From IMG/VR virus record IMGVR_UViG_3300027708_000012, positions 124,001 to 188,000 of that record: a DNA stretch of 64,000 bases; one strand, given 5' to 3'. Positions 28,580-43,984 of this stretch are shown here, piece by piece (within the stretch, counting starts at the first letter, position 1; the number at the start of each line of letters is the position of its first letter). The notes under the pieces are model-generated. The model had not been told where the DNA came from and made no database searches. It was given only the letters and a program-made list of their open reading frames with translations. The position numbers were made by a program, and so were the translations under genes.

Positions 28580-28680
28580 TCTATATCCTTATCTCTATTA
28601 CTACATATAAATTTAATAATTAGTGCCAACACAATAGTCCATCCAACTATCATACAACACCAAAAAAATAAATTAGACAT
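28576..28680 (-). CDS. Small single-TM membrane peptide (34 aa; not in the ORF track)
   Basis: MSNLFFWCCMIVGWTIVLALIIKFICSNRDKDIE; fills the gap and overlaps both neighbours. Confidence 0.5.
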   Translation of the reverse strand: MSNLFFWCCMIVGWTIVLALIIKFICSNRDKDIE

Positions 28681-29377
28681 TATTCATCTCGTTAGTCAAT
28701 GATTGAAAAATATCTGAATTCATAAAATTTAAAGTTAATTCGTGATCTCTAGGAGTCCTGGGGTCTTCATTTAAATGCAAATCAAATCCAATACTTACAC
28801 GCAGAGTAGATTCCGTATGTTCATCGGTATAGTGCCTTATATATCCTGGAAATATTGAGATATCTCCTTTGGTGTTATCAACTGGAACAATTAAATCTTT
28901 ATCTATTGGGCACCTATAATATGTTTTAGTTTTATAATTATCTAAATGTATATTACCGCTAAGATATGTATAAGGATCGATGCCATGCGCATGTTCGTTA
29001 ATTCTAGAACCTTGCCGCATAACATTATACCAACATACAATATTAATATCCCTTATGTGCGAATGATGATAATGAATATAATTTAAATAAGAAATTTGAA
29101 TAAATTTATACAAGTCGTTTAATTCTGGTAATTCTTTTCCAAACTGAAGTAAATTGTATCTTCCGTATCTACTAGTAATACTATCTATACCAAGTCCAGT
29201 CCCACCATCGTCTCTGTTAGCAGGATATGTATTGATGATTCGTTGCTCGTTATTAATAAGCCACTGTCTAACAATGTCTGTTTTATCAGCATTCCAAATA
29301 TCAGTTCCAATAGTAAAATCCCATGTTGGTGCAAATTCTGTTACAGGATGCATACTTTTTACTTTTAAAAATTTCAT
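28673..29377 (-). CDS. Putative 2OG-Fe(II) oxygenase
   Basis: WYNV...HAH...LSGNIHL...IFPGYIRHY...RVSIGFD, a DSBH pattern with HxH...H...RxS. Confidence 0.7.
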   Translation of the reverse strand: MKFLKVKSMHPVTEFAPTWDFTIGTDIWNADKTDIVRQWLINNEQRIINTYPANRDDGGTGLGIDSITSRYGRYNLLQFGKELPELNDLYKFIQISYLNYIHYHHSHIRDINIVCWYNVMRQGSRINEHAHGIDPYTYLSGNIHLDNYKTKTYYRCPIDKDLIVPVDNTKGDISIFPGYIRHYTDEHTESTLRVSIGFDLHLNEDPRTPRDHELTLNFMNSDIFQSLTNEMNNV

Positions 29378-30229
29378 TTAAGTACCCCATTCATTTTTAA
29401 ATAATGGTACTTGTAATCTGTCACTATATCGCAATCCTGCTTTCATTGCAAGTTCTGCAACACGTCGATTATTTAAAGAATATACACTTTCAACACCGCC
29501 TACTGGCATGAAATAAACTGGTCCTTCAAATCCAGCCAATCTATAAATGTCTGTAACTTCTAATGCTTCGTATGCATCTTGTTCTGTAGCAATAACAAAT
29601 TTTAAATATGTATAACCAATTTCTTGATATTCGCAAACAATATCAGGGCGAATTGCTTCTTCTCGTTTTTCACCACTACAACTTAGTTTGGCACTAACAC
29701 TAAATGTAATTCCTTTATTAAAGGGATCTCTAATAGACCAATCTTGTAAGTATTCTTTAAATTCTGGAGTTATTTGTTGAGTACCATTTGTTTCAAATGT
29801 AATTTCTTTTAATGGTCTCATGTATTCGTGATCTAACAAGTCTGGGTAAGCACGTTGCCAACCTAGCAAAGGCTCACCGCCTGTAATAACAAGATGCTCG
29901 TCTAGCCATGTTTTGTAAGGAAGAATTTCCATAATACGATCTACTATGCCGTTACTTTCCATCATAGGGCTTAAATCTTTAAATCTTGGATCCCAACTTG
30001 CATAGCTATCACAACCTGTGCTAACTAAGGGTAATTCGTTGTATGTTTTAAATTCTGCAATACGTTCTGCAATCAAATCATTTTCAGTACTTAATTGGCC
30101 AGCTGGCATACCAAAGCCCGCACATTTAAAATTACACCCAAATGTACGTAAAAACACAGACGGGACACCCATAAAGCGTCCTTCACCTTGAATACTATAA
30201 AATAGTTCTGCTATTTTAATTTTGCTCAT
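29378..30229 (-). CDS. queE: 7-carboxy-7-deazaguanine synthase (radical SAM)
   Basis: ELFYSIQGEG..GVPSVFLRTFGCNFKC...CDS, ITGGEPLL, FETNGT and LKFVI. Confidence 0.9.
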   Translation of the reverse strand: MSKIKIAELFYSIQGEGRFMGVPSVFLRTFGCNFKCAGFGMPAGQLSTENDLIAERIAEFKTYNELPLVSTGCDSYASWDPRFKDLSPMMESNGIVDRIMEILPYKTWLDEHLVITGGEPLLGWQRAYPDLLDHEYMRPLKEITFETNGTQQITPEFKEYLQDWSIRDPFNKGITFSVSAKLSCSGEKREEAIRPDIVCEYQEIGYTYLKFVIATEQDAYEALEVTDIYRLAGFEGPVYFMPVGGVESVYSLNNRRVAELAMKAGLRYSDRLQVPLFKNEWGT

Positions 30230-30923
30230 TTTTAAGTCCTTTTACTTTTTCTATCCAAATATTAATTACTATTGTAACTCTTAAATCTTCTGTATTTTTA
30301 TCACTAGGGTCAACTAAATGATTTATATATGACGGCATGATAATAAAATCATCTTCTTTACAGTCTAAAACTACTGATTCACTGTATTCAGTATTGTTCG
30401 GATCATCTAAATTAAATATATCAGAAACATGACTATATGTTTTATAGTATTGTACAAATGATGACGGATTCATTAATCTAGTACAAGTATGTCCTTCTTT
30501 CAAACTTAGATAGTGTACACATGAAAAACTATACCAATTATCCGTATCGTCTACAGTACCTAAATGATTATGCTGACGCATTTTTTGAACATGCTTATTA
30601 GCTGTTACATTTACTATTCTGTAATGATACTTAATAGGGCAAACAACTGACAAATTATCCATGAATGATTTAATAATCAAATCATATTGAGAATTTAATT
30701 GTGCAAGATCTAATTTTTTAAATTTAGGATTAGTTTCGTCGTTATAAGAATGATGCCAGTTATCTTTATTTTTAGAATCCCATTCATTTCTCAAAGGAGA
30801 AATCTCATAATTTTCTTGTATAATATTAAACAATTCTTGTTTATTATACAACCCAGGAGGGATCGTAGTCTTCCATATTGAAGGACTAAACAAATATAAT
30901 CGAGATAATTCGTTATTACTCAT
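30216..30923 (-). CDS. Putative 2OG-Fe(II) oxygenase
   Basis: LFSPSIW...HNH...FSCVHYL...IMPSYINHLV...RVTIVIN. Confidence 0.7.
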   Translation of the reverse strand: MSNNELSRLYLFSPSIWKTTIPPGLYNKQELFNIIQENYEISPLRNEWDSKNKDNWHHSYNDETNPKFKKLDLAQLNSQYDLIIKSFMDNLSVVCPIKYHYRIVNVTANKHVQKMRQHNHLGTVDDTDNWYSFSCVHYLSLKEGHTCTRLMNPSSFVQYYKTYSHVSDIFNLDDPNNTEYSESVVLDCKEDDFIIMPSYINHLVDPSDKNTEDLRVTIVINIWIEKVKGLKNEQN

Positions 30924-31249: not shown

Positions 31250-31362
31250 TTAATTTCTTTAATTATATATTTTGATGCAGGGTAATTTTCTCGAAGCCAT
31301 TCCAACAGACCAGGTTCAACCGGAAAACGAACATTATCAAATTTGTTAGTAATATATTTCAT
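31246..31362 (-). CDS. Small hypothetical protein (38 aa; not in the ORF track)
   Basis: MKYITNKFDNVRFPVEPGLLEWLRENYPASKYIIKEIK; ATGA overlaps at both ends. Confidence 0.6.
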   Translation of the reverse strand: MKYITNKFDNVRFPVEPGLLEWLRENYPASKYIIKEIK

Positions 31363-32096
31363 TTTGAAGCGTACTCTTGTTGCATCTTAATATTGTCAAA
31401 GAACTCTTTCTTAGTACCGTGGTCATCTTTAAATGCACCTTTCAATACTGTTGTCTGCGTCAAACTACTTTTAGCCATAATGCCGCGATTCTCACAACAA
31501 CCGTGTATAGCTTGTACATACACACCTATGTCTCTAGCTTCTGTTGCTTTTTGGATTTCACGGGCAATGTCATTGCAAAGCTCCTCTTGGAGTGTGCCTC
31601 GACGGGCACACCATTGTGCAATACGGGTGTACTTAGATAAACCAATAAGTTTTTGTGCCGCGATAATACCAATATAAGCAACACCGGTAACAGGCTGGTG
31701 ATGATGACTGCACATACTGCGCAACTCACTACGAACAACGAGCATACCTTCATAACGGTCTGCAGAATCATTTGGAAACGCTGTTGCGTCTGGTGCTTGT
31801 TCATACCTACCACTCATTACTTCATTAAAATACATTTTAGCCAATCTCTTGGCTGTGCCTTTTGAATTAGGATCGTTTTCGCGATCAATAAGCAAAGTAT
31901 CTAATACTTTTTCAAAAGCCTCTGTTGCTTCTTTGATTAAAATTGCTTTGTCTTCTTCGCTAACGTATTCGCTAATGTTGTCACCTGCCCAGAAGCGTTT
32001 ATTATCACGCTTCATCTTAAAGCGGATAACATCTGCAAGGTTACACTCTTCGTAGCCTTTATCGTCAATATTTTGATATGTTACGGATTCAGTCAT
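31359..32096 (-). CDS. folE: GTP cyclohydrolase I
   Basis: SMCSHHHQP, IGLSKY.R, LQE and H.C...RG motifs. Confidence 0.95.
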   Translation of the reverse strand: MTESVTYQNIDDKGYEECNLADVIRFKMKRDNKRFWAGDNISEYVSEEDKAILIKEATEAFEKVLDTLLIDRENDPNSKGTAKRLAKMYFNEVMSGRYEQAPDATAFPNDSADRYEGMLVVRSELRSMCSHHHQPVTGVAYIGIIAAQKLIGLSKYTRIAQWCARRGTLQEELCNDIAREIQKATEARDIGVYVQAIHGCCENRGIMAKSSLTQTTVLKGAFKDDHGTKKEFFDNIKMQQEYASK

Positions 32097-32355: not shown

Positions 32356-32506
32356 GTTCGGCGTTCTTTAGTTCGTCTTCAAGATATTCTTTATAACTAG
32401 TAAGTGTTGATATAGCTTGTATGCCTCCAGAACCTTCGGCTAGTTCTAACAAGTTTTTCTCAACTGCGGCAATTTTATCTTTGATTTCTTGAATAGTTAA
32501 AGTCAT
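32336..32506 (-). CDS. Hypothetical small coiled-coil protein
   Basis: Likely start at MTLTIQE (32506), ATGA overlap with the PRTase stop. Confidence 0.5.
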   Translation of the reverse strand: MTLTIQEIKDKIAAVEKNLLELAEGSGGIQAISTLTSYKEYLEDELKNAEHARSNH

Positions 32507-32994
32507 AACCAAAATTCCTCCCAGGGATAAACTAACCAACAATCTTCTTCTGATTTGTTTACAGTCCAAACATAATAGTCTGGATCTTTGAATTGACTGC
32601 TAAAATTGTGTGTCAATACAGCAAAGCGAACAGAATCTCCCCAGATAGCTTTCCATTTAGGATCGTCTGGAAAGCAACCGCTAGGCCAATCATTCTTAAT
32701 CCAATTAACAGTTGATCCTTGATCGTTAATATCATCGACTATCAAAATCTTTTTACCATTAAATGCATCTTCTGCCATGCCGAGGTTGCTAACTGTATCA
32801 CCGCCATCACGTAGACTAATATCTAGGCTGTTCATCTTGATACCCGTGTATTGACTAAGCAGATTAGCGGGAACAAGCCCGCCACGCCCGATGCCTACAA
32901 TGTAGTCAGGCCGCCAATAATGATTTTGCATTTGTCTAGCAATATCTAAGCAAGCACCTTCTACTTGTTGCCAAGTATAATGAATCTTTTTCAT
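32503..32994 (-). CDS. Type I phosphoribosyltransferase (Gpt/xanthine-PRT-like)
   Basis: VGIGRGGLVPA, PRPP loop ILIVDDINDQGST, and W..YPWE. Confidence 0.9.
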   Translation of the reverse strand: MKKIHYTWQQVEGACLDIARQMQNHYWRPDYIVGIGRGGLVPANLLSQYTGIKMNSLDISLRDGGDTVSNLGMAEDAFNGKKILIVDDINDQGSTVNWIKNDWPSGCFPDDPKWKAIWGDSVRFAVLTHNFSSQFKDPDYYVWTVNKSEEDCWLVYPWEEFWL

Positions 32995-33227
32995 AAAGTT
33001 AATGCGTATGCTAATGTGTTTAATTCACTCTTAGTCATAAAGAAGTTATACGTTTGACTATCTATAACTTTGCCGTCTTTCAAATTTTCTTGAATAAGGT
33101 CAAGGCTGTACAACCCTTTAGGACTTAGTACTTCGTGTTTTTCCATGCGTACACGGAAACCTTCCGATTGCTTAATTGTCATTTCTTTTGCAGTGACTGC
33201 AACCGATTCATGTAGTTCTTTCATCAT
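32991..33227 (-). CDS. Hypothetical protein
   Basis: 78 aa ORF with AGGAG SD. Confidence 0.55.
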   Translation of the reverse strand: MMKELHESVAVTAKEMTIKQSEGFRVRMEKHEVLSPKGLYSLDLIQENLKDGKVIDSQTYNFFMTKSELNTLAYALTL

Positions 33228-33658
33228 TCTTCTCCTTTAATTGCTTCAAATGTTCTATACTTACCCAATGCATTTATGTATTCATCATACAGTTTTTTTA
33301 GCTTTGGGTGCTTCTTTTCTAGTTTAACATCTCTTTCGGGAATTTGCAAGACTTTTTCGATTATACTTAGCCTTTCTTCCAAGTCCTGTCCATTTAATAC
33401 TAGTCGACCTTTGACTTCTAATTCCGGAGGATTAGTTTGTTTAACAGTTATTGCAGGATTGACATTGATAGTGCTAGTACCAGTGGTCCAAGCAGTTCCA
33501 TTTGATCCGGTGCTTGTTAAAAATGCACCAGCTGATCCTGTACTATTGGTAGCGTAAACTTGTCCGCTACCACCGCCACCACCTGCCCCACCGCCACCAA
33601 TATATACAGTACTACCAACTAATCCATTATTGACGACGTTCTTCGAGATATGACTCAT
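33224..33658 (-). CDS. Hypothetical protein (Gly/Ser/Thr-rich N-terminus)
   Basis: 144 aa ORF. Confidence 0.5.
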   Translation of the reverse strand: MSHISKNVVNNGLVGSTVYIGGGGAGGGGGSGQVYATNSTGSAGAFLTSTGSNGTAWTTGTSTINVNPAITVKQTNPPELEVKGRLVLNGQDLEERLSIIEKVLQIPERDVKLEKKHPKLKKLYDEYINALGKYRTFEAIKGEE

Positions 33659-34100
33659 TATGTATCCATTTATTTTTTACAAGAAATCCCCACTCACGTT
33701 TTTGAGGACCAGGCATAAACAGCGTCCAGGGTGTTACATTTGGATCTAGCTCAATGCGATGGTAACTACCAGCACTACAAGTGCGAAAATGACCAGGCCT
33801 CCGCCAATGTTTGATTTCACCTATCATTTCTCCTTTGGAATTAAATTCTGGAACATACTCATAATAGCCGCCTGCTAGTATCAGAGTGGCATATGGCCAT
33901 GGATGGTCATGAACATCGCCGGGATCTCCTTTATGAAACTTATGTAAGAATACATTAAAGGGAAAATGTTTACGGTCTTTTAAAAAGATATAGTAGCGAG
34001 TTAACAATGGCTCGTTACTTTGACGATCCATAATAATGCGTTTGCGGTCACGCTGTTCTAGCCAATTAAGGACGCGGTCTCTTATCTTCGGGAGTATCAT
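33627..34100 (-). CDS. Cupin-fold protein
   Basis: HDHPW...GGYYE...YHRIEL...WTLF metal-binding cupin pattern. Confidence 0.7.
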   Translation of the reverse strand: MILPKIRDRVLNWLEQRDRKRIIMDRQSNEPLLTRYYIFLKDRKHFPFNVFLHKFHKGDPGDVHDHPWPYATLILAGGYYEYVPEFNSKGEMIGEIKHWRRPGHFRTCSAGSYHRIELDPNVTPWTLFMPGPQKREWGFLVKNKWIHNESYLEERRQ

Positions 34101-34485
34101 AATGGTCTTTCACAAGTTTATAAACAGTTTTAAATTTTTCAAGTGCTATCTTTAGTCCAGGATATTCCTCGCACATTTTTTGTACACGATTAAAATCTGG
34201 AAAAGTATCAACCCACTCTTCTGGCAAATTAATTTTAAAGCTACTAGTGTCAATACTGATATTATTGAGTGTACTAATTTGTGCAGTAGTTAGTGTTGGA
34301 ATAGTAGACGATATACTAATAGAACCCACGTAGTTGCTAGAGTACGTATACGATGGATAGCTAGTACTAATACTATTTGTATCTATAGTGGTGATTGAAT
34401 TTAAATCAATAGTATCTAAACTACTGATTGTTATAGTATCACTTGATGTTGTTGAGTAACTCGTTGGCTGAGAAGTAGTTGTCAC
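34066..34485 (-). CDS. Hypothetical protein (Ser/Thr-rich N-terminus)
   Basis: 139 aa ORF. The C-terminal 'YPGLKIALEKFK' resembles the end of 33224..33658 ('HPKLKKLYDEY'). Confidence 0.5.
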   Translation of the reverse strand: MTTTSQPTSYSTTSSDTITISSLDTIDLNSITTIDTNSISTSYPSYTYSSNYVGSISISSTIPTLTTAQISTLNNISIDTSSFKINLPEEWVDTFPDFNRVQKMCEEYPGLKIALEKFKTVYKLVKDHYDTPEDKRPRP

Positions 34486-35533
34486 GTAAAGACTCCGTTT
34501 GTTTATGTAGCATTGGCAGTCTAGTTTTATAGTTTTCCATATGATCTATAATTGTTTTACAAACAAAAGGTCTATATGTAGAATATGATTCAAAACTTTC
34601 TGTCCACTCGCTAGGATATTTAAATGTATCAAATGCCATTTCGCTGTAACTAAGTCTATCTGGAACCATAGGGATAGAATCTACAATAGCACCTTCATAC
34701 CAACTAATTCCAAGTGTTTCTTGCAAGTTAGCACTAAACACCATTTTGGATTCGCCTAACAAGTTATGATATTCATTCTTGGTTAGTTGTTGATCCTGAC
34801 ATACTACAAATTCATATTGTGGCAAGTGTGTAGCCAAGTCACGGAATATGTCAACTTGTTTCTCTGGTGCAATGCGATGCGGGAACAAGATAAGATCACG
34901 TTTAGGCATGTTCTTATATGGTAGCAAAGTATCTTCCATATATTCCATAGGCCAACCTGTACGAACCATTTTGCCGTCATCATAGCGTTCAGCAAAATCT
35001 TCTTCGTACCATGGATTTTCGCTAGGATATCCATCTTCTAATAATTCGTCGATGAACAACTTGACATGAAACTCTGTGGCAAAGTAGTTATGATCAAATG
35101 CATGATAGAAACTTTTCTCTGCATGCCTAACCCACTTCTTTTTGCCAACAAGACGTCCTAAGAAATCTTGTGGATCATAACTACCGGCATGCCATAAGCC
35201 ATGTGTAACTACTGGAATATTCAGTAGTTCACTCATGTATTTTAAGTTTACAATGCCAGGATGCCAAGCGTCAGTAAACAAAAAATGATCGCCAGGCTTA
35301 ACTGCTCCGGAGCAAAATAAACGACCCATCTGTTCAACTTGGCTAGCCTTGTATATATTAGTGCCGCCAAAATTGAGAAATGCTCCAGGAGTGGTAGCAC
35401 TAGGAATGTCCGTAGGACCTGATATAATGTTGACATTGTGTCCAGCCTTTTGTAGGAGTTCGGGTACATGGGTCTTCCATTGACCCGTGTACCTTGTCTC
35501 AACTGATTCTAAGTCAATTAAGAATATATTCAT
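34439..35533 (-). CDS. GT-B fold glycosyltransferase
   Basis: ILFPHRIAPEKQ...SANLQETLGISWYEG...PDRLSYSEM, matching the GT4-like ExxGxxxxE motif. Confidence 0.8.
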   Translation of the reverse strand: MNIFLIDLESVETRYTGQWKTHVPELLQKAGHNVNIISGPTDIPSATTPGAFLNFGGTNIYKASQVEQMGRLFCSGAVKPGDHFLFTDAWHPGIVNLKYMSELLNIPVVTHGLWHAGSYDPQDFLGRLVGKKKWVRHAEKSFYHAFDHNYFATEFHVKLFIDELLEDGYPSENPWYEEDFAERYDDGKMVRTGWPMEYMEDTLLPYKNMPKRDLILFPHRIAPEKQVDIFRDLATHLPQYEFVVCQDQQLTKNEYHNLLGESKMVFSANLQETLGISWYEGAIVDSIPMVPDRLSYSEMAFDTFKYPSEWTESFESYSTYRPFVCKTIIDHMENYKTRLPMLHKQTESLRDNYFSANELLNNIK

Positions 35534-35795: not shown

Positions 35796-36185
35796 TTAAT
35801 ATTTAATAAATGAACCATTTTCTCCGTCTTCGGAGACCTCGATCCAAACCTCACGATCTGGATACTTTTGTGAAATGACTTCATATAAATCGTTTGAAAT
35901 CATTTCACAACTCTTGTAGTCTAATGCTAGTATACTATCTTTGTACAAGTTTAGCAACCATCGTTTAAACTGAATAAACTCAATATCACGGTCATCGTGA
36001 ACTACACTGATCCATACTTTGAAATGGAAAATGTGACGATGCGGATAGCCTAGAAAACTTACATCATATTCGTCGCCTGTTGCCAGGTTAGGATCTGTAA
36101 GTGCAGCCGGATATTTGTGCATACCTTCTTTGTTAAAGGTAACCCAAATCATTTTGTTAGGTCTAACATCTTGTTTAATTTTCAT
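35796..36185 (-). CDS. queD: QueD-like T-fold enzyme (6-carboxytetrahydropterin synthase-like)
   Basis: H...HRHIF..V...DIEF..K...SCE....Y......V.IEVSED pattern, located near folE and queE. Confidence 0.7.
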   Translation of the reverse strand: MKIKQDVRPNKMIWVTFNKEGMHKYPAALTDPNLATGDEYDVSFLGYPHRHIFHFKVWISVVHDDRDIEFIQFKRWLLNLYKDSILALDYKSCEMISNDLYEVISQKYPDREVWIEVSEDGENGSFIKY

Positions 36186-36610
36186 ACTTTTTCCTCAAAC
36201 ATTTCAGGATTTAATTTTACTTCATTTACATATCTAGTCAAGTGATGTCCGTTTTGTTTTGTTACTGACACATGACAATTTCTGCACAGACATTCTAAAT
36301 TTTTAGGGTCATTATTATGACGGTCTCCATCAATATGATTAACATCTAGTTGTTCTGGATAAAGAATTGTTGCTGTACAAGCAAAACCGTGATGAGCGTC
36401 GATGTTGGAACATTTTTGTTTCATTTTCCAATTGTCTACTTCATGTTTTCTAGTAGAACGATGTGGAGTACAAAACATTTTCCATTTAGCTGTTAATGAT
36501 CCGTTTAACTTCTTACCTGCATTGTGATAGCTGGCTCTGTTAGTGCAACCGGGTAAGGCGCACACAGGACTGTAGTTGTTAATTACAGATCGGTTGATTC
36601 TTGTAGTCAT
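36182..36610 (-). CDS. HNH endonuclease with N-terminal Cys/His (Zn-binding) region
   Basis: LDVNHIDGDRHNNDPKNLECLCRNCH. Likely start at MTTRIN (36610) with ATGA overlaps on both sides. Confidence 0.85.
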   Translation of the reverse strand: MTTRINRSVINNYSPVCALPGCTNRASYHNAGKKLNGSLTAKWKMFCTPHRSTRKHEVDNWKMKQKCSNIDAHHGFACTATILYPEQLDVNHIDGDRHNNDPKNLECLCRNCHVSVTKQNGHHLTRYVNEVKLNPEMFEEKV

Positions 36611-37146
36611 GTTGGTGTATCTTGTGTGTACTGATCCCAATGAGTATACTTGTCTTTACTCATTAGGCTCTGCAAGTGATGAGTCCACACACCTGGATTG
36701 GTAGCACCCCAAGTTCGGTCGTCCAGTTTAAGTGTGGCATTGTAGTTGAGTTGATTAATGTAAGGTAACTTAACACTAATCATGGGAACAAAGCGGGGAT
36801 ACTCGTTATAGGCAGACTCTAATACGCCTTCGATGTGTTCAACACCAAAGTCTAGTGACACCCAATAGCCTGCTTTTAGACAGCCTATAATAACTTCATC
36901 CCACGCTTTATATTCTTCTTGCGAAATACTTTTAGGATTAAAACTTTGACTAGTGCCAAAGTAAATGTGTTTAATACGTTTAGACTCATCCCAGTATGCC
37001 TGGGTATCATCAGCCTTACGCAGTATTTCTTCTAGTGGAGGAGTACCTACCACAAACAGTGTAAACATACCATAACAAATAGTATGTTCGACTTCGTAAC
37101 CTGTAAAGTAAACGACACCTTGTCGTTCTTCAGTGTTTAGTCCCAT
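36607..37146 (-). CDS. Hypothetical protein within the modification cluster
   Basis: 179 aa alpha/beta-type ORF (TLFVVG, HIYFG, WVSLDF). Confidence 0.6.
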   Translation of the reverse strand: MGLNTEERQGVVYFTGYEVEHTICYGMFTLFVVGTPPLEEILRKADDTQAYWDESKRIKHIYFGTSQSFNPKSISQEEYKAWDEVIIGCLKAGYWVSLDFGVEHIEGVLESAYNEYPRFVPMISVKLPYINQLNYNATLKLDDRTWGATNPGVWTHHLQSLMSKDKYTHWDQYTQDTPT

Positions 37147-38042
37147 TTAATATAGCCTCTGCTGTAACCGATTGGACGATCCATACCATCCGCAAACGCT
37201 TGTTGCCATTCAGTAGTACGATTATATGACCTTGTCCAGAAAGAATCAACCTCAAGATAACCGTTTTCAATCCAATACTTGGCCATATGCATACAATCAA
37301 TGAATTTTGGATTACGGGGACTAGGTTTAACTGTAGTCACAGCTTTCCAAAGTTGAGACTGTGCTTCCGCTTTGCTTACGGCTTTACCTACGCCGTCTAC
37401 AATCACAGCATTATCATTTAGATTTATCTCTATACCAAGTTCGTATTTTCCAGTAAGGTCCACTACAACATCGTAGCTTTCACTAGTTCCTAACAGTAGT
37501 TTATCTCCCCACAAATCTTGGTTACTTGAACCTAGGACATCTACGTGAAAGATATACCCATTTAGTCGCATTGTATGATATGCAACCCAGGCAAGGAAAC
37601 CACTACCAATTATAAGCATGCGATTGTTATCATGCCGGCCTTGCCGATCATGCAAATACTCCTTGGCCTGCTCAATAAGATTAATACCACAAGCAACTGG
37701 TTCTAAAATATAACGAGGATGTGCTTCGGGAATTTTTACATATTCACCTTTGCGTACAGTATACTGATCAGCATAGGCCGGCTCACCGCGTGTAGCAACA
37801 TAGTCTCCAGTTTGTACGTCATTGCAATTTGCACCAACTGACATAACTTGTCCGATGCCTTCGTGTCCTTGCATGTGCAATGGCAATGGATCAAATTCGC
37901 CCACCATCATATCTATATCGCTACGGCACACACCAGTCATTACAGCTCGGACATAAATGCTATCTTGACCCCAAGCTGGAATTTCATAGTCAACTTCTTC
38001 AAAGTAGCCTTTGCCTTCTGTTTGTAAACACTTTACTTTCAT
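37137..38042 (-). CDS. Zn-dependent medium-chain dehydrogenase/reductase
   Basis: GVCRSD, GHEGIG, EPVAC and IIGSGFLA. Confidence 0.85.
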   Translation of the reverse strand: MKVKCLQTEGKGYFEEVDYEIPAWGQDSIYVRAVMTGVCRSDIDMMVGEFDPLPLHMQGHEGIGQVMSVGANCNDVQTGDYVATRGEPAYADQYTVRKGEYVKIPEAHPRYILEPVACGINLIEQAKEYLHDRQGRHDNNRMLIIGSGFLAWVAYHTMRLNGYIFHVDVLGSSNQDLWGDKLLLGTSESYDVVVDLTGKYELGIEINLNDNAVIVDGVGKAVSKAEAQSQLWKAVTTVKPSPRNPKFIDCMHMAKYWIENGYLEVDSFWTRSYNRTTEWQQAFADGMDRPIGYSRGYIKWD

Positions 38043-38920
38043 AATTTTTCTATTTGTTCATGAATCCATGCGTCTATTTCAAATTGATTAGTCCAGAATT
38101 TAGCATCGTCAACACGACTAACAGCTTCTTTAATCATTGCTGTATATGCTTCTTCTGGACACCATCCTAATTCAAAACGTTCTACTCGATTGCCATCTGT
38201 AATAAATTCAATAGAACTGTCTTCAATGTCCATACTACGCCAATTGGCAGCACATGACCATTTGTTACCAAAATCGATAACACATGCATCATCTACATCA
38301 TATGTTCCGTTAGCATTAATAATTCCGTATTCTGTGCTATCTATATCTTCTAGAACCCAATTCATTAAAGATACTTTATTGTTTACTTTTTCAGAGCGCC
38401 AGTTGGGGTTTATAGCAATATAAAGACTTAATAAATGAGGCATTAAATCACGACTAACACCACCAAAGGATAATTTTTTAGTAGTAAACCAACTACCGGG
38501 ACTAGGAATACAGTTTTTTCTAATCCAACGTATGTTTACTATCTTTGCTTGATTGGCTAATTCTTTTAACTCACTGATGTTACTACGCCACATGTTGTTT
38601 TTAACCATCATGAAACGTGTATATTTAAATTCTTCTAAAAGACGTTGCCATGCAAAGCTATTTGATACCCCAGGCTTTTCTACAAATACAATTTTACTAT
38701 AAGGTGCAACTTTGCTTGCAAGTTCAAAATGTGTAAAATTAGGAGTACAGATATGTGCTGTATCAAATGTTTTATGAATCAAAATGGCTTGATCTACAGA
38801 TGTATACATTGCACCTTTATTTGGATCTTGATCTACTGTAATAATATCATGTCCAAGTTTTTCTAGAACAGTTTTGTACAACTGTCCTATACCCATGCCA
38901 ATAATTAAACTACGCTTCAT
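38039..38920 (-). CDS. Gfo/Idh/MocA family NAD(P) oxidoreductase
   Basis: IIGMGIG, ICTPNFTH, VFVEKP and GGVSRDLMPH. Confidence 0.9.
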   Translation of the reverse strand: MKRSLIIGMGIGQLYKTVLEKLGHDIITVDQDPNKGAMYTSVDQAILIHKTFDTAHICTPNFTHFELASKVAPYSKIVFVEKPGVSNSFAWQRLLEEFKYTRFMMVKNNMWRSNISELKELANQAKIVNIRWIRKNCIPSPGSWFTTKKLSFGGVSRDLMPHLLSLYIAINPNWRSEKVNNKVSLMNWVLEDIDSTEYGIINANGTYDVDDACVIDFGNKWSCAANWRSMDIEDSSIEFITDGNRVERFELGWCPEEAYTAMIKEAVSRVDDAKFWTNQFEIDAWIHEQIEKL

Positions 38921-39152
38921 TTTTATTTTGCTCGTATTGTTTAAACAATCTTGTTACGTCTTCCATGCGTTCTTGGAATACATCAGGCGCCTGAAGTGCT
39001 GTACGCTGCATATCCCAGTCCGTTGGATAGTGTCTCAAACATGATCTTGCACGATCCTTAATTGCTTTAGGAACTCGAGGAGTAGTTAAGATCTCTAGTA
39101 AAAATCTTTGAGTTTGCACTACTGCTCGATATCTTTCGTCAGGTAACGTCAT
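38910..39152 (-). CDS. Hypothetical protein
   Basis: 80 aa ORF. Confidence 0.55.
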   Translation of the reverse strand: MTLPDERYRAVVQTQRFLLEILTTPRVPKAIKDRARSCLRHYPTDWDMQRTALQAPDVFQERMEDVTRLFKQYEQNKNEA

Positions 39153-40845
39153 GTACGCTTGCCTCTAATGCGTCAAGTTTATTAATCGACTCTTCATCAA
39201 AGTCGGGCTCTTCTTCTGATTGTACAGGATCTGGATCTACTTCGTCAAATAATACGGAGAACATTTTACCTGCATTAACAGTTTTCTTACCGGTAGCACC
39301 TCGTGTACCTGGAATAGCTTGCCAAAATTTATCAAAACTATCAATAATAGCTTCAGCGGTAGCACGATCGGGTGTACTAAAGATAGCATCAACTACATCT
39401 TTAAAGTAAACACGTTCAAACTTTTCATCTACTAACATAGCAGGACATAGTCCGGCATCGTATTGACGATTAGCTTCTTGTACACTATTCAAATGTAGCC
39501 AAACATTATGGCCCATCATAATAGCGTAAGTGAAACTATCCCAACTTGTTTTACCTTCTTTGCCTATTTTATTTAGGTCTCCTGGGCCGTAGATACAAAT
39601 ATCTTTAACTTCTACTCCATCCATTAATGGACTTGTAGTAAATGACTCAAAATGCCCATCTTGTACTACGACGTCTTGGAATAATCTAGTATCTTTGGCG
39701 TATTTTTTGTTGTCAAGACTTGGCAACATGCGGTAGAGCCACTTTTCTCTATCTTTGATTTCTGTTTGGACATAGATTTGTCCGTTTGCTGTTGCCAAAA
39801 ACGGTGAGGCGCAGTCAAAAGATATGGTAAAGTTTTCATTATGGTATTTCCTAATTGCTCGTTGTATGTCAGTTAATAATAATGCCCACTCTAATTTAGA
39901 GGTGCCCAGGAAGTGCATCCAATCTTGATGACCTTTTTCAAGTAAGCCGTCAAATTTCAATGCCACTAATCTACGTAATACTAAATCTACATCGCACATG
40001 TTTTGTCCACCCATAGCCCAGCCATTAAAAGCCTTGTCGCCATAGATTTTAGGATCGCAAAAATCTTTCATTTGCTGATACCAGTCTTCTGCTTGTCCGT
40101 GATTCTCGCCTTGCAATACGTTTAAGAACTTACAAGCACCAGTACGATGTTTGATAAAGTATTCATTGTTATACTTTGTAGCATTTACCGCTTGTTGATA
40201 TGAACTAATGCCAGTGGCTTTCTTACCAACAGGACTACGTTCTACCCAGGCTGGAATATCGAGCACCATGCCATAGTCCATGAGTGCATCCATCCATGCT
40301 AACACTTGTTCACGTTTCTTTTGTGCCGCATCTAACAATGCTTGATAGTTTTTAACATGGTCAATCTTAGTATACTTAGGATTGCCGTTTTTGTCTGTCT
40401 TAGGATGTCCTGTTGGATGTAGTTGTGGTACTAGTTCAACACCTTTTGCCATTACTTCTTTCCATTTAGCCGCAACTTCAGGACCGTTAGGATCTCGCCA
40501 TTCGCCTGCCCACACGCCTTTACCAATCTGGAATCCGCCCGAGTCGCCTAATACCCAGCTAGTAGATCTATCTCTATTTCGAAACATATCTTCACTAGGA
40601 TCAAATTTAGTTAAATCTAAATTAGCATGACCTGCTGAATACAAACAGTGGTCAAAGTAAAATGCCGCATTAGGGTTCAGGTAGTTCATAGCTTCAATGC
40701 CTAATGGTCCAAAGCTAGCAGGAATACGTGCAGGATCAACATAGTTACTATGACGCTGTTTACCTATGTAAGTGCTATAAAACCCTGACGTTGCTGGCAG
40801 GAAATATGCATAGTCTAATTGAGTTGCTGTTAAATTTTTATTCAT
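39139..40845 (-). CDS. tRNA-guanine transglycosylase-fold protein, probable DNA 7-deazaguanine transglycosylase (DpdA-like)
   Basis: DSGGFQ, MVLDIP, NVLQG, HFLG and SFDCASP motifs. No CxCxxC Zn motif of tRNA TGT. Clustered with folE, queD and queE. Confidence 0.8.
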   Translation of the reverse strand: MNKNLTATQLDYAYFLPATSGFYSTYIGKQRHSNYVDPARIPASFGPLGIEAMNYLNPNAAFYFDHCLYSAGHANLDLTKFDPSEDMFRNRDRSTSWVLGDSGGFQIGKGVWAGEWRDPNGPEVAAKWKEVMAKGVELVPQLHPTGHPKTDKNGNPKYTKIDHVKNYQALLDAAQKKREQVLAWMDALMDYGMVLDIPAWVERSPVGKKATGISSYQQAVNATKYNNEYFIKHRTGACKFLNVLQGENHGQAEDWYQQMKDFCDPKIYGDKAFNGWAMGGQNMCDVDLVLRRLVALKFDGLLEKGHQDWMHFLGTSKLEWALLLTDIQRAIRKYHNENFTISFDCASPFLATANGQIYVQTEIKDREKWLYRMLPSLDNKKYAKDTRLFQDVVVQDGHFESFTTSPLMDGVEVKDICIYGPGDLNKIGKEGKTSWDSFTYAIMMGHNVWLHLNSVQEANRQYDAGLCPAMLVDEKFERVYFKDVVDAIFSTPDRATAEAIIDSFDKFWQAIPGTRGATGKKTVNAGKMFSVLFDEVDPDPVQSEEEPDFDEESINKLDALEASVHDVT

Positions 40846-41097
40846 TTATTTTCTTATCCATACAAAATAATATGGGTCAAATGCCCAACCTTCTGGCGGA
40901 TTTAATGGGTCAAATCTTTCTGGATTAACATAAGGAGTTATTGGATTACTAAACCACTCTGTATACCTACGTGTTATTTCTTCTCTATCGCGATCGCTAG
41001 TATACTCATGGGCCATACGGCCTTCGGTTATGGTTTCGTATTCTCCGCCGAACCACATCCAAGGCCATATTCCATGAGTAAAAAACTTTTTAATCAT
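40846..41097 (-). CDS. Hypothetical protein
   Basis: 83 aa ORF. Confidence 0.5.
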   Translation of the reverse strand: MIKKFFTHGIWPWMWFGGEYETITEGRMAHEYTSDRDREEITRRYTEWFSNPITPYVNPERFDPLNPPEGWAFDPYYFVWIRK

Positions 41098-42259
41098 TGT
41101 CTATCTCAGGTTTGTAAAACACTCGAGCCATTGGCACAGCACTTACAGTGCTAATTAAACTCATAATCACTACGGCAGCAAACATATTAACACTAATAAC
41201 GTTGGCTGTCAACAGCATAGTAACCAAGAAGATTTCCATCAGGCCTTTGTTTTGTAGCAAAGCAGTTTTGAAACAAACAACTCTGAGTCCTTGGTCCTTA
41301 TAAGCTAACCAAACACCGACAAACTTAGTCCCAACAGCAATGATATACATAGCAATGGCACCTAGTAGAATAGTTTCAAAATCTAAAGTCCAATTAGTCT
41401 TTAAACCAGACCAGATAAAGAACACAGGCATTAACCAAACCATTTGCTGTTCGGCCATTCCTTCATTCCATTTAATAGTATCTCGTGGAGTAATCATACC
41501 TGCTAAGAACGCACCTAATACATAGTGTAATCCCGCCCAATGACTAAATGCCGCCATAGTCAATACCATAGCAACTGTTAAATTAGCATACGATTTTTCG
41601 CCGGCAAGCTCTAAAACCTTAGGCCAAACAAAATACAATACTGATAATACTGCAAAGAATATAGCCGAGTAGATAGCATACTTGCCCATACTAACAATAA
41701 CAGCTACAGTTAGCCATAGAACTAAATCGTCAAAGGTAACTAAGGCCAGTAGCTTACGACCCATGTTACTAGGCCACATACCAATTTCTTTACAAGCAAT
41801 AACCAGCATTGGCATAGCTGTAATACAAGTGGCTACACCCATGCCCCAAGCATATTGCCAGAATGGTCGTTCTGTAGTATGCCAAACAGGATTATCAAAG
41901 AACAATAAAAAACTACAGCCTGCTAATAAGATAGGAACAATAATAACTTGGAATGATTGTATCCAAATACTATTACCTTCTTGTGCTATAACTTCTTTAG
42001 GTTTAAGTTCGATACCGGCAATAAAAGCAAAGATTGTAATTGCTAAAATTTGAATAGCATCTAACCCTGTCTTAATCGGCGCAGTAAAAACTGTGCTAAA
42101 CAGCTCTGGATAAAACTGCCCTAGCGCACTAGGCCCAAGGCAAATGCCAAAGGCAATTTGCGCCATTGGCAACGGAATCCACTTTTCCATTCGTGTAATT
42201 TTTAATAGTAGCCACGGTATAAACACCATAGCGGCTATAATAAACAATAAATTACCCAT
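41090..42259 (-). CDS. Cation/H+ antiporter (CPA2, membrane domain only)
   Basis: About 12 hydrophobic segments, with GICLGPS, FIAGIE, FDD, LGAFLAG and PVFF..SG. Confidence 0.85.
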   Translation of the reverse strand: MGNLLFIIAAMVFIPWLLLKITRMEKWIPLPMAQIAFGICLGPSALGQFYPELFSTVFTAPIKTGLDAIQILAITIFAFIAGIELKPKEVIAQEGNSIWIQSFQVIIVPILLAGCSFLLFFDNPVWHTTERPFWQYAWGMGVATCITAMPMLVIACKEIGMWPSNMGRKLLALVTFDDLVLWLTVAVIVSMGKYAIYSAIFFAVLSVLYFVWPKVLELAGEKSYANLTVAMVLTMAAFSHWAGLHYVLGAFLAGMITPRDTIKWNEGMAEQQMVWLMPVFFIWSGLKTNWTLDFETILLGAIAMYIIAVGTKFVGVWLAYKDQGLRVVCFKTALLQNKGLMEIFLVTMLLTANVISVNMFAAVVIMSLISTVSAVPMARVFYKPEIDND

Positions 42260-43185: not shown

Positions 43186-43214
43186 ATTATATAGGTTTTT
43201 TTAGACAATGTCAA
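43186..43214 (-). promoter_or_regulatory. Consensus sigma70 promoter
   Basis: TTGACA-17 nt-TATAAT. Confidence 0.85.
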
Positions 43215-43984
43215 GGATTTTTCCTTACCTTTTTGTTATACTTTATTGCCGTTTCTAATATAGATAGATTAACATCTAATCTGTTTCCATAACGTATAAA
43301 TGCTGTTGTGTCTTTGGGAAAGCATGCTCCGCCAAAGCCTCGTTGATCATCAGGCCCAGGTACTTGCATATGACTATGGCCGATTCGATTGTCGTATGAT
43401 AGTACTTGCCGAATTACATCAAAGTCTGCACCGTTCTGCTCGCATATGTCATATAGCTGATTAAAAAACGATACTTTCAAACTTAAAAAACAATTAGTGG
43501 CATATTTGATTGTACTAGCTTCTGCAAATGTAGTGTTTAAAAATGATTTACAATTAGGCAACGATTCTTCAAACATTGTTTGCCACATTTTTCCAGGATC
43601 TTCTCCTCCTAGAATCATATACTTTTGATTGGCAAAATCTTCGTTAGCACTGGCCGATCGTAGAAATTCTGGACTGTAACAAATATCGTGATCTTGATAA
43701 TTATCAGCCAACTCTTCTAAGTAGTCAGGCGGTACTGTCGATTTTATCAAAACAGGTACACCATACGGTAAGTTATTCAAGACTGATTCTATCTGTCTAG
43801 TATCACAATCACCGTCGGTTGTACCAGGTGTTCCAACACAAATAATAACTCCGTCAGGATTAGGAAAATCACCTAATGTCGAAGTTGAGAATCTTGGATC
43901 CACAATATGTAGTTCGTTTTGATCTTTTAATGAATTTGCTACAGCCTTGCCTACAAAACCGTAACCTGCAATTATAATTTTCAT
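43211..43984 (-). CDS. ugd: UDP-glucose/GDP-mannose dehydrogenase family protein (lacks C-terminal domain)
   Basis: GYGFVG, CVGTP, IKSTVPP, SPEFLR, KY..N.FL..KVSFFN and GFGGACFPKD. Confidence 0.85.
   Translation of the reverse strand: MKIIIAGYGFVGKAVANSLKDQNELHIVDPRFSTSTLGDFPNPDGVIICVGTPGTTDGDCDTRQIESVLNNLPYGVPVLIKSTVPPDYLEELADNYQDHDICYSPEFLRSASANEDFANQKYMILGGEDPGKMWQTMFEESLPNCKSFLNTTFAEASTIKYATNCFLSLKVSFFNQLYDICEQNGADFDVIRQVLSYDNRIGHSHMQVPGPDDQRGFGGACFPKDTTAFIRYGNRLDVNLSILETAIKYNKKVRKNP

What the first reader, a model, noticed from the sequence alone, without database searches (positions are those of the whole stretch)
37137..38920. Coupled Gfo/Idh/MocA and Zn-MDR pair next to the transglycosylase
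Seen: the two oxidoreductases overlap by ATGA and lie one small ORF downstream of the DpdA-like gene. Established: oxidise/re-reduce pairs of these families invert sugar or cyclitol stereocentres via keto intermediates. Inference: they form an epimerisation module making an unusual sugar donor, or they reduce the 7-substituent of the deazaguanine.
Basis: partly seen in the sequence, partly recalled or inferred. Interest (0 to 1): 0.6.

Follow-up and report, generated by a model that had tools for sequence, protein, structure and literature searches.

The report
Optional dehydrogenase pair in deazaguanine cluster
Two overlapping dehydrogenase genes sit right after a DNA base-swapping (transglycosylase) gene in a freshwater giant phage; they are an optional add-on to a widespread gene cluster that replaces guanine in phage DNA with a modified base, and they probably tailor that still-unknown modification.

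Summary
On the minus strand, a 293-aa Gfo/Idh/MocA protein (38039-38920) and a 301-aa Zn-MDR-type protein (37137-38042) overlap by ATGA. They lie one 80-aa ORF downstream of a 568-aa protein whose model has the tRNA-guanine transglycosylase fold.

The window is part of a 345-kb freshwater jumbo phage. The pair sits in an unbroken chain of overlapping genes: DpdA-like, BPSL0761-like, GFO, ADH, 179-aa protein, HNH, DpdL. A GT-B glycosyltransferase, a phosphoribosyltransferase, FolE and QueE follow.

Across 160 related viral loci the core order is PolB-247-DpdA-179-DpdL-GT-FolE-PRT-QueE. The pair is an accessory cassette, always between DpdA and the 179-aa gene when it is in the cluster, and gained or lost at least six times. 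In Pseudomonas phage PA5oct it moved away together with the 179-aa gene. In one contig it stands alone.

Catalytic motifs are invariant in the environmental lineages but degenerate in PA5oct.

The substrate is unknown. My best guess is redox tailoring of a sugar or hydroxylated part of a hypermodified 7-deazaguanine. Reduction of the 7-substituent is disfavoured.

The parts
39139..40845 (-). 568-aa DpdA-like DNA/tRNA-guanine transglycosylase-fold protein (core cluster gene)
   Evidence: AF2 model with pLDDT 81.7. Foldseek finds Z. mobilis TGT at E 7e-9, probability 1.0. Motifs LGDSGGFQ and SFDCASP are invariant in 17 homologues. No Pfam TGT hit. Present in 78 of 81 and 78 of 80 related loci.
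38910..39152 (-). 80-aa BPSL0761-family small protein; overlaps DpdA by 14 nt and GFO by 11 nt
   Evidence: NCBIfam NF041728, E 2.3e-18. Present in 52 of 81 GFO-seeded loci and in 3 GFO-less loci.
38039..38920 (-). 293-aa Gfo/Idh/MocA-family NAD(P)-dependent oxidoreductase (GFO)
   Evidence: PF01408, 30.5 bits against a cut-off of 24. GMGIGQ, VEKPG and GGVSRDLMPH are invariant in 22 homologues. The best solved relative is DgpA (7xr9), profile E 2.2e-8.
37137..38042 (-). 301-aa Zn-MDR-type dehydrogenase (ADH) without the structural-zinc lobe; ATGA overlap with GFO
   Evidence: PF08240, 40.2 bits against a cut-off of 23.5. C39, H60, E61, E114 and GSGFLA are invariant in 22 homologues. The ATGA overlap is kept in 78 of 81 loci.
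36607..37146 (-). 179-aa protein of a large family without annotation; core cluster gene; overlaps ADH by 10 nt
   Evidence: The family has 653 clusters at 50% identity. It sits next to DpdA/DpdL/GT in 77-78 of 80 distant loci. It travels with GFO-ADH in PA5oct. It has a homologue in the ACP17 deazaguanine cluster. The model is a partial beta/alpha barrel with no significant match.
36182..36640 (-). HNH homing-endonuclease insertion between the 179-aa gene and DpdL
   Evidence: PF13392 and PHROG HNH families. Present in only 2 of 81 loci.
35796..36185 (-). 129-aa DpdL homologue (QueD-like T-fold; proposed CDG decarboxylase)
   Evidence: phrog_17812, E 6e-30. The motif LGYPHRHIF matches the DpdL signature LxxxHRHxF described in PMC10516641. 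tblastn finds phiST DpdL and ACP17 gp125.
34439..35533 (-). 364-aa GT-B (Glycos_transf_1-type) glycosyltransferase; core cluster gene
   Evidence: 6 of 9 diverse family members hit PF00534, best E 6.8e-12. Atlas neighbours carry PF00534. Adjacent to DpdL in PA5oct, ACP17, Phosso and BUDD.
32503..32994 (-). 163-aa phosphoribosyltransferase
   Evidence: PF00156, E 9.5e-12. Recurrent in the cluster.
31359..32096 (-). FolE (GTP cyclohydrolase I)
   Evidence: PF01227, E 5e-40.
29378..30229 (-). QueE-like radical-SAM CDG synthase
   Evidence: NCBIfam QueE models at E 1e-12 to 1e-9, all below their curated cut-offs. Homologous to PA5oct gp162 and ACP17 gp126, both annotated QueE-like.

Best explanation
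The two genes encode an active NAD(P)-dependent dehydrogenase pair: a Gfo/Idh/MocA enzyme followed by a zinc MDR enzyme. Together they form an optional tailoring cassette of a phage 7-deazaguanine DNA-hypermodification cluster.

The core cluster contains FolE, QueD (elsewhere in the genome), QueE, a DpdL homologue, a 568-aa TGT-fold DpdA-like protein, the 179-aa protein, a GT-B glycosyltransferase and a phosphoribosyltransferase. It builds a 7-deazaguanine derivative and puts it into DNA in place of guanine. In lineages that carry the cassette, the Gfo enzyme oxidises a secondary alcohol to a ketone and the MDR enzyme reduces it (or a neighbouring carbonyl). The alcohol is most plausibly on the sugar handled by the cluster's glycosyltransferase, either on the nucleotide-sugar donor or after transfer. 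The result is a variant of the modification.

Shown here: family membership, intact catalytic motifs, translational coupling, fixed position in the cluster, accessory status, and co-migration with the 179-aa gene.

Inferred: that the pair acts on the modification at all, that the substrate is a sugar, and the oxidise-then-reduce order.
For: - **Family and motifs.** Pfam hits lie above the cut-offs. In 22 homologues from at least three separate lineages, GxGxG, EKP and D-x3-H are invariant in GFO, and Cys39, His60, Glu61, Glu114 and GSGFLA are invariant in ADH.
- **Coupling.** The ATGA overlap is kept in 78 of 81 loci and the 10-nt ADH/179 overlap in 59 of 74. In the window every junction from DpdA to DpdL is an overlap.
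- **Position.** The order is DpdA-(BPSL)-GFO-ADH-179 in 80 GFO-seeded loci and in 3 independently sampled loci.
- **PA5oct.** GFO-ADH-179 stay contiguous, 26 kb from the rest of the cluster. PA5oct DNA resists several G-containing restriction sites and is hit by nucleases specific for hypermodified DNA (PMC12191111).
- **The 179-aa gene is a core gene.** It lies next to DpdA, DpdL and GT in 77-78 of 80 distant loci and inside the ACP17 cluster.
- **Cluster identity.** DpdA-like fold, DpdL, glycosyltransferase.
- **Closest solved Gfo relatives.** DgpA enzymes oxidise C3 of a glucosyl group on an aromatic aglycone.
- **Natural-product precedent.** A glycosyltransferase decorates a 7-deazapurine in huimycin (HuiG).
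- **Other inserts at the same junction.** Other lineages carry other candidate tailoring genes there: a HIT-methyltransferase fusion and a 2OG oxygenase.
Against: - No substrate evidence of any kind.
- The pair is absent from 77 of 80 loci seeded with distant 179-aa relatives, so the core product does not need it.
- The DpdA-179 junction also takes up HNH endonucleases and unknown ORFs, so position alone could reflect an insertion hot spot.
- One contig (L054) has the pair without DpdA or the 179-aa gene, beside NAD-salvage genes.
- In PA5oct the Gfo homologue has lost GxGxG and EKP, and the MDR homologue has changed zinc ligands. There the proteins are probably not ordinary dehydrogenases.
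- No covariation with the UDP-glucose-dehydrogenase-like gene.
- The match to DgpA is weak (37 bits).
- No glycosylated deazaguanine has been reported in DNA.
Confidence: 0.4

Rival explanations
1. The pair is an unrelated 'moron' or auxiliary metabolic cassette. It landed in an insertion hot spot of the cluster and acts on a host sugar, polyol or other small alcohol. It has no role in DNA modification.
For: It was gained or lost at least 6 times (10-11 by parsimony) on the DpdA tree. The same junction holds HNH endonucleases and assorted unknown ORFs. L054 carries the pair alone, near NAMPT, NMNAT-Nudix and Macro genes. The window's region also took up a Na+/H+ exchanger and an HNH gene.
Against: The position is constant and the pair overlaps cluster genes on both sides in most loci. 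The 179-aa core gene moved with the pair in PA5oct. The relatives found are overwhelmingly viral.
Confidence: 0.25
2. The pair works on the base or its precursors rather than on a sugar. It could reduce an oxidised 7-substituent (for example 7-formyl to 7-hydroxymethyl). Or it could reduce carbonyls on a pterin side chain made by the FolE and T-fold enzymes, with the glycosyltransferase then decorating the product.
For: The pair lies next to the DpdA-like gene and overlaps the 179-aa gene. The best, though non-significant, structural neighbours of the 179-aa model are QueE enzymes, which bind pterin or deazapurine substrates (VIA Z 7.2; BFVD E 0.025). FolE and two T-fold proteins are present. 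DpdL's decarboxylase role is only proposed and failed in E. coli (PMC10516641).
Against: If DpdL decarboxylates CDG, no 7-substituent is left. No QueC or QueF lies in the cluster; only partial QueC-like matches exist, more than 60 kb away. A carboxylate needs activation before NAD(P)H reduction (own knowledge). QueE and a TGT-fold enzyme point to a deazaguanine, not a pterin end product. The glycosyltransferase is a core gene even where the pair is missing.
Confidence: 0.12
3. The two proteins serve mainly as non-catalytic partners of the 179-aa protein, as scaffolds or specificity subunits. Redox chemistry is secondary or lost.
For: The PA5oct homologues lack the glycine-rich loop and the EKP lysine (gp123) and two canonical zinc ligands (gp122). 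Even so, they are kept, contiguous with the 179-aa gene, in all 11 PA5oct-like records (9 named phages).
Against: All catalytic and cofactor motifs are invariant across the environmental lineages, at 47-100% identity. The complex prediction gave no answer.
Confidence: 0.08

Closest known systems
Phage 7-deazaguanine DNA-modification clusters with DpdA3 and DpdL (Cellulophaga phage phiST, Acidovorax phage ACP17; Cui et al. 2023, PMC10516641)
   Same: FolE, QueD, QueE, a DpdL homologue with the LxxxHRHxF motif and a distant TGT-fold transglycosylase lie next to the replication genes. No QueC lies in the cluster.
   Different: The transglycosylase here has 568 aa, against 259 aa in phiST. It matches phiST DpdA3 only faintly (hhalign E 0.002, probability 14%). 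The cluster adds a GT-B glycosyltransferase, the 179-aa protein and a phosphoribosyltransferase, and in some lineages the GFO-ADH pair. None of these is described in that work. The final base is unknown.
DgpA-type glycoside 3-oxidoreductases (Gfo/Idh/MocA; PDB 7xr9, 9m37)
   Same: They are the best solved relatives of the GFO protein, with an aligned EKP motif and GG...D...H motif. They oxidise a sugar hydroxyl on a glycoside of an aromatic aglycone (own knowledge).
   Different: The score is only 37 bits. The phage protein is about 70 residues shorter. No partner C-glycoside lyase (DgpB/C) is present. The substrate is untested.
Polyol- and threonine-dehydrogenase-type Zn-MDR enzymes
   Same: The GroES-like catalytic domain carries the Cys, His-Glu and Glu (LEPVAC) zinc-ligand pattern and a GSGFLA dinucleotide loop.
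   Different: There is no structural-zinc lobe. Only the first ~85 residues match known MDRs, and there is no PF00107 hit. The protein has 301 aa against about 340-380.
T4-type DNA glucosyltransferases and sugar-bearing phage DNA hypermodifications
   Same: A GT-B enzyme is encoded with base-modification genes next to the replication module. This suggests a sugar-decorated base.
   Different: The base would be a 7-deazapurine rather than hydroxymethyl-cytosine. A dehydrogenase pair that tailors the sugar has no counterpart in the T-even systems (own knowledge).

Membership tests
Gfo/Idh/MocA oxidoreductases | N-terminal Rossmann domain scoring above the Pfam PF01408 gathering threshold | tested here: met
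   30.5 bits against a cut-off of 24. Atlas neighbours are 78-100% PF01408.
Gfo/Idh/MocA oxidoreductases | Glycine-rich dinucleotide loop, EKP motif, and a catalytic Asp/His in the GG..D...H segment | tested here: met
   GMGIGQ, VEKPG and GGVSRDLMPH are invariant in 22 homologues and align to the same motifs of DgpA. They are NOT met in the PA5oct homologue.
Gfo/Idh/MocA oxidoreductases | C-terminal alpha/beta substrate-binding domain | tested here: inconclusive
   PF22725 scores 16.5 bits, below the cut-off of 27. The profile alignment to DgpA runs to residue 233. No structure was predicted for this protein.
Zinc-containing medium-chain dehydrogenases/reductases (MDR) | GroES-like catalytic domain (PF08240) above threshold, with the catalytic zinc ligands | tested here: met
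   40.2 bits against a cut-off of 23.5. GVCRSD and GHEG align to GVCHTD and GHEG of solved ADHs. C39, H60, E61 and E114 are invariant.
Zinc-containing medium-chain dehydrogenases/reductases (MDR) | Structural-zinc lobe with four cysteines | tested here: not met
   There are no cysteines between residues 62 and 117. The Pfam match stops at profile position 62 of 104. Some genuine MDRs also lack this lobe (own knowledge).
Zinc-containing medium-chain dehydrogenases/reductases (MDR) | Rossmann cofactor domain (PF00107) | tested here: inconclusive
   No PF00107 hit at E<=0.01, but an invariant GSGFLA loop lies at the expected place.
DpdA / TGT-family transglycosylases (the 568-aa neighbour) | TIM-barrel TGT fold | tested here: met
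   Foldseek E 7e-9, probability 1.0 against Z. mobilis TGT; 188 hits at E<=1e-3.
DpdA / TGT-family transglycosylases (the 568-aa neighbour) | Sequence-level membership (Pfam PF01702) and similarity to named DpdA subfamilies | tested here: not met
   No PF01702 match in the protein or in the whole genome. Nothing from phmmer or a profile search of the PDB. hhalign to phiST DpdA3 gives E 0.002 at 14% probability.
DpdA / TGT-family transglycosylases (the 568-aa neighbour) | Catalytic aspartates in DSGG(F/Y)Q-like and (F)DC/(Y)DS-like motifs; base exchange in DNA | tested here: inconclusive
   LGDSGGFQ and SFDCASP are invariant and resemble the TGT motifs as I recall them. No residue-level structural superposition was available, and activity cannot be tested here.
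DpdL (proposed CDG decarboxylase; the 129-aa neighbour) | QueD-like T-fold with LxxxHRHxF in place of CxxxHGH | tested here: met
   The sequence LGYPHRHIF. Homology to phiST DpdL and ACP17 gp125. Signature as given in PMC10516641.

The most novel reading that the evidence does not exclude
The core cluster (DpdA-like, 179-aa protein, DpdL, GT-B glycosyltransferase) makes a sugar-bearing 7-deazaguanine in phage DNA. That would be the first glycosylated purine analogue in a genome. The GFO-ADH cassette would oxidise and re-reduce one sugar carbon, making a stereochemical or keto/deoxy variant in some lineages. This would be an arms-race diversification against nucleases and glycosylases that depend on the modification. 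A C-glycosidic link at C7 of the deazapurine is chemically conceivable and would fit the DgpA-like affinity of the Gfo enzyme.
Probability: 0.2. Interest if true: 0.85.

Novelty: new variant of a known kind. Interest (0 to 1): 0.55.

Why it matters
Phage 7-deazaguanine DNA modifications are a known counter-defence. The cluster described here is widespread: the 179-aa family alone has 653 clusters at 50% identity, and the Gfo word search found about 2000 relatives, mostly in freshwater jumbo phages.

It contains a glycosyltransferase, an unannotated core protein and, in some lineages, this dehydrogenase pair. None of these is accounted for in published pathways.

Pseudomonas phage PA5oct can be grown in culture. 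It carries all the parts and has an uncharacterised modified G. The chemistry is therefore directly testable by nucleoside mass spectrometry and gene deletion.

If the pair tailors the modification, it would show a new enzymatic route to diversify DNA hypermodifications. It could also supply new reagents for making modified DNA.

Tried and rejected
- **Megablast of the region against GenBank phages:** no match.
- **Sequence and profile searches of the PDB** for the 568-aa, 364-aa and 179-aa proteins: nothing.
- **Fold of the 179-aa protein.** Foldseek on PDB and BFVD and VIA-align on 48,161 chains gave no significant match. QueE recurs among the weak top hits (Z 7.2, below the stated noise level of about 8), so I treat it as a lead only. 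The ESM Atlas structure library was unavailable.
- **Longer relatives of the 179-aa protein** as possible fusions: their extensions have no Pfam family.
- **Contigs of distant 179-aa relatives** fetched by exact look-up were too short to show context.
- **Complex prediction for GFO + ADH:** 'no answer' (score 0.00). This is not evidence for or against binding.
- **Covariation of the pair with the UDP-glucose-dehydrogenase-like gene or the BPSL0761-like ORF:** too few independent contrasts, no signal.
- **Isoelectric points:** all cluster proteins, including the DpdA-like one, are acidic, so pI says nothing about DNA binding.
- **A frameshifted 179-aa gene after the pair in L054:** none.
- **Literature searches** for glycosylated deazaguanine in phage DNA, or for a Gfo/MDR pair in such clusters: none found.
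- **RNA libraries.** Exact fragments of GFO, ADH, the 179-aa gene and DpdA occur in two lake metatranscriptome libraries, but as contigs that may derive from DNA. Transcription is therefore not shown.
Full report
**1. What is at the coordinates**

The window is bases 124001-188000 of a 345,369-bp virus record, with CheckV completeness 94%. From about 20 kb onward almost every gene is on the minus strand and tightly packed.

ORF 38039-38920 (293 aa) and ORF 37137-38042 (301 aa) share the four bases ATGA. Pfam puts the first in GFO_IDH_MocA (PF01408, 30.5 bits, cut-off 24). It puts the second in the GroES-like domain of zinc alcohol dehydrogenases (PF08240, 40.2 bits, cut-off 23.5). NCBIfam gives only weak, sub-threshold matches to many specific enzymes of both superfamilies.

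**2. The neighbour called 'DpdA-like'**

The 568-aa ORF (39139-40845) has no Pfam, PHROG, NCBIfam or PDB sequence match. The TGT model finds nothing in the whole genome.

An alignment of 17 homologues shows the invariant motifs LGDSGGFQ, LQGEN, HFLGTS and SFDCASP. The AlphaFold model (pLDDT 81.7) matches Zymomonas tRNA-guanine transglycosylase, with Foldseek E 7e-9, probability 1.0 and 188 hits at E<=1e-3. Sequence-level membership in the named DpdA subfamilies is not shown: hhalign to phiST DpdA3 gives E 0.002 at 14% probability.

**3. The surrounding genes**

Going downstream of the pair:
- A 179-aa ORF (36607-37146) that overlaps the ADH gene by 10 nt.
- An HNH endonuclease.
- A 129-aa protein (phrog_17812) with the sequence LGYPHRHIF. 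This is the LxxxHRHxF signature of DpdL, the QueD paralogue proposed as the CDG decarboxylase (PMC10516641). It is homologous to phiST DpdL and ACP17 gp125.
- An 83-aa ORF.
- A 364-aa protein whose family is a Glycos_transf_1-type GT-B glycosyltransferase. Six of nine diverse members hit PF00534 (best E 6.8e-12), Atlas neighbours agree, and GenBank annotators named it the same way.
- A phosphoribosyltransferase, FolE, and a QueE-like radical-SAM enzyme flanked by two 2OG-Fe(II) oxygenases.

QueD lies elsewhere in the genome. QueC is represented only by partial matches in two larger proteins more than 60 kb away.

Every junction from the DpdA-like gene to DpdL is an overlap: 14, 11, 4, 10, 34 and 4 nt. 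No convincing internal promoter or terminator was found. A perfect sigma-70 consensus lies upstream, at 43214-43186.

**4. Related loci**

The Gfo protein has about 2000 relatives in the word search. The 120 best listed are 68-100% identical and many lie on contigs of 100-350 kb.

Eighty IMG/VR loci seeded with the Gfo protein show the same order: PolB-(UGDH-like)-247-DpdA-(BPSL)-GFO-ADH-179-DpdL-x-GT-...-PRT-FolE-QueE. The ATGA overlap is kept in 78 of 81 loci, and the ADH/179 overlap in 59 of 74.

These loci are close kin, so I also sampled from the other side. The 179-aa protein belongs to a large family without annotation: 653 clusters at 50% identity, and a median of 37% identity to the window among the best 150.

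Eighty loci seeded with distant members of that family carry:

| Gene | Loci out of 80 |
|---|---|
| DpdA-like | 78 |
| DpdL | 77 |
| Glycosyltransferase | 70 |
| PolB | 71 |
| GFO-ADH pair | 3 |

In those three loci the pair is again exactly between DpdA and the 179-aa gene.

On a tree of 150 DpdA-like proteins, presence of the pair needs 10-11 changes, and at least 6 on well-supported branches. The pair is therefore an accessory cassette that has been gained or lost repeatedly.

The same junction holds other inserts in other lineages: a HIT-methyltransferase fusion, a 2OG oxygenase, HNH endonucleases and unknown ORFs.

**5. Cultured relatives**

*Pseudomonas jumbo phage PA5oct and its kin.* These have the Gfo, MDR and 179-aa homologues (34%, 34% and 40% identity) as three contiguous genes, gp123-gp122-gp121. 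Their DpdA-like, GT, DpdL and QueE genes (gp168, gp167, gp166, gp162) lie 26 kb away, next to the polymerase. So the 179-aa core gene left the cluster together with the pair. This is the best single argument that the three work together.

PA5oct DNA resists several restriction enzymes in a way that points to a modified G. It is also attacked by END nucleases, which target only hypermodified DNA. The structure of the base is not known (PMC12191111).

*Acidovorax phage ACP17.* This phage was used by Cui et al. as a DpdL/DpdA source. Its order is QueD-FolE-gp122 (179-aa family)-gp123 (424 aa, TGT-like motifs)-gp124 (GT family)-gp125 (DpdL)-QueE, and it has no pair. Expression of only dpdL and dpdA from ACP17 or phiST in E. 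coli gave no dDG. That fits a need for the further core genes.

*Phosso and BUDD.* Both keep GT next to DpdL.

*Contig L054.* This 11-kb contig has the pair, with its ATGA overlap, but no DpdA or 179-aa gene. It lies near NAMPT, NMNAT-Nudix and Macro genes.

**6. Are the enzymes active?**

In 22 homologues, including the independently placed lineages L105/L137 and L136, the Gfo protein keeps G8, G10, G12, K82-P83, D158 and H162. The MDR protein keeps C39, H60, E61, E114 and GSGFLA. These align to the corresponding motifs of DgpA and of solved alcohol dehydrogenases. The MDR protein lacks the structural-zinc lobe.

In PA5oct the picture differs. The glycine loop reads KTKKDL, EKP reads DIN, and the zinc ligands read S..., C-E. 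There the proteins are unlikely to be ordinary dehydrogenases.

The closest solved relatives of the Gfo protein are DgpA-type glycoside 3-oxidoreductases (E 1e-7 for the single sequence, 2e-8 for the profile). The margin over other Gfo enzymes is small.

**7. Interpretation**

The evidence fits an optional tailoring cassette of a 7-deazaguanine hypermodification cluster. A glycosyltransferase in the core makes a sugar the most plausible substrate. A natural-product precedent exists for a glycosyltransferase acting on a 7-deazapurine (HuiG in huimycin). This remains inference.

Reduction of the 7-substituent is disfavoured for two reasons. DpdL would remove that substituent, and no QueC or QueF sits in the cluster.

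The main rival is that the pair is an unrelated cassette sitting in an insertion hot spot. The hot-spot evidence and L054 support it. The constant position, the overlaps on both sides and the co-migration with the 179-aa gene speak against it.

**8. Other checks**

- The stretch is held by freshwater metagenomes from several studies.
- Exact pieces of GFO, ADH, the 179-aa gene and DpdA occur in two lake-water metatranscriptome libraries. This is compatible with expression but does not prove it.
- The complex prediction gave no verdict.
- The 179-aa model (pLDDT 70) is a partial beta/alpha barrel with no significant match. QueE recurs among the weak top hits.

**9. Verdict**

The functional reading is partly supported: the link to the cluster holds, but the chemistry is not shown.

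New here:
- The pair is accessory and mobile within a much larger, undescribed variant of the DpdA/DpdL cluster.
- That cluster also contains a glycosyltransferase and a widespread 179-aa protein.
- The cultured phage PA5oct offers a direct experimental handle.

Noticed in passing
window 36607-37146 (and loci L095-L174): The 179-aa protein belongs to a large, unannotated, mostly viral family: 653 clusters at 50% identity. Its conserved residues are E18, E20, H60, K140, D142, D143, N150-PGVW and H156. It sits almost always between a DpdA-like gene and DpdL. It looks like an undescribed core component of this deazaguanine system.
   Followed up: partly
window 34439-35533: A GT-B (Glycos_transf_1-type) glycosyltransferase is a core member of DpdL-containing clusters in many phages of Pseudomonadota (PA5oct, ACP17, Phosso, BUDD, X1, BCSR5) and in the freshwater clade. 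This hints that the final base is more than plain 7-deazaguanine.
   Followed up: partly
window 41090-42259: A 389-aa Na+/H+ exchanger (PF00999, E 2e-23) is encoded inside the phage replication/modification block. It is present in only 3 of 81 related loci, so it is a recent insertion.
   Followed up: no
window 36182-36640: An HNH homing endonuclease is inserted between the 179-aa gene and DpdL. Only 2 of 81 loci have it. In most loci the two flanking genes abut or overlap.
   Followed up: partly
window 43211-43984: A 257-aa UDP-glucose/GDP-mannose dehydrogenase-like protein has only part of the N-terminal domain and the central domain, with no C-terminal nucleotide-sugar-binding domain. It is present in about half of the loci and does not covary with the GFO-ADH pair.
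   Followed up: partly
window 28673-29377 and 30216-30923: Two 2OG-Fe(II) oxygenase (PF13759) genes flank the QueE-like gene. At most one of the 81 related loci matches either of them (0 and 1 hits).
   Followed up: no
window 32503-32994: A small phosphoribosyltransferase is recurrent in the cluster. It could recycle the guanine released by base exchange, or make a deazapurine nucleotide as in the toyocamycin and tubercidin pathways (own knowledge).
   Followed up: no
window 43214-43186 (minus strand): A perfect 12/12 sigma-70 consensus (TTGACA-17-TATAAT) lies just upstream of the 247-aa gene. It may mark the start of the transcription unit that runs through the DpdA-like gene and the pair.
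   Followed up: no
L114:7961-9004, L126:8426-9004, L130:2163-2573: The DpdA-179 junction is an insertion hot spot. In other lineages it holds a HIT-methyltransferase fusion, a 2OG-Fe(II) oxygenase or an HNH endonuclease.
   Followed up: partly
L054:4385-5933: Downstream of a detached GFO-ADH pair lies a run of five small paralogous ORFs (74-109 aa). Each ends in a hydrophobic ...(F/W)LL(R/K)W(G/A)-like motif.
   Followed up: no
L001:8995-10763 (PA5oct gp123, gp122): The PA5oct homologues of the pair have lost the canonical cofactor and catalytic motifs, yet they are conserved in all 11 PA5oct-like records (9 named phages). They are candidate pseudoenzymes.
   Followed up: partly
window 57509-59785: A full-length ClpB/ClpA-type double-AAA+ chaperone (758 aa) is encoded by the phage.
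   Followed up: no
window 33224-33658 and 34066-34485: Two small cluster-associated ORFs have low-complexity N-terminal halves, one Gly-rich and one Ser/Thr-rich, and conserved C-terminal parts. They have no family.
   Followed up: no
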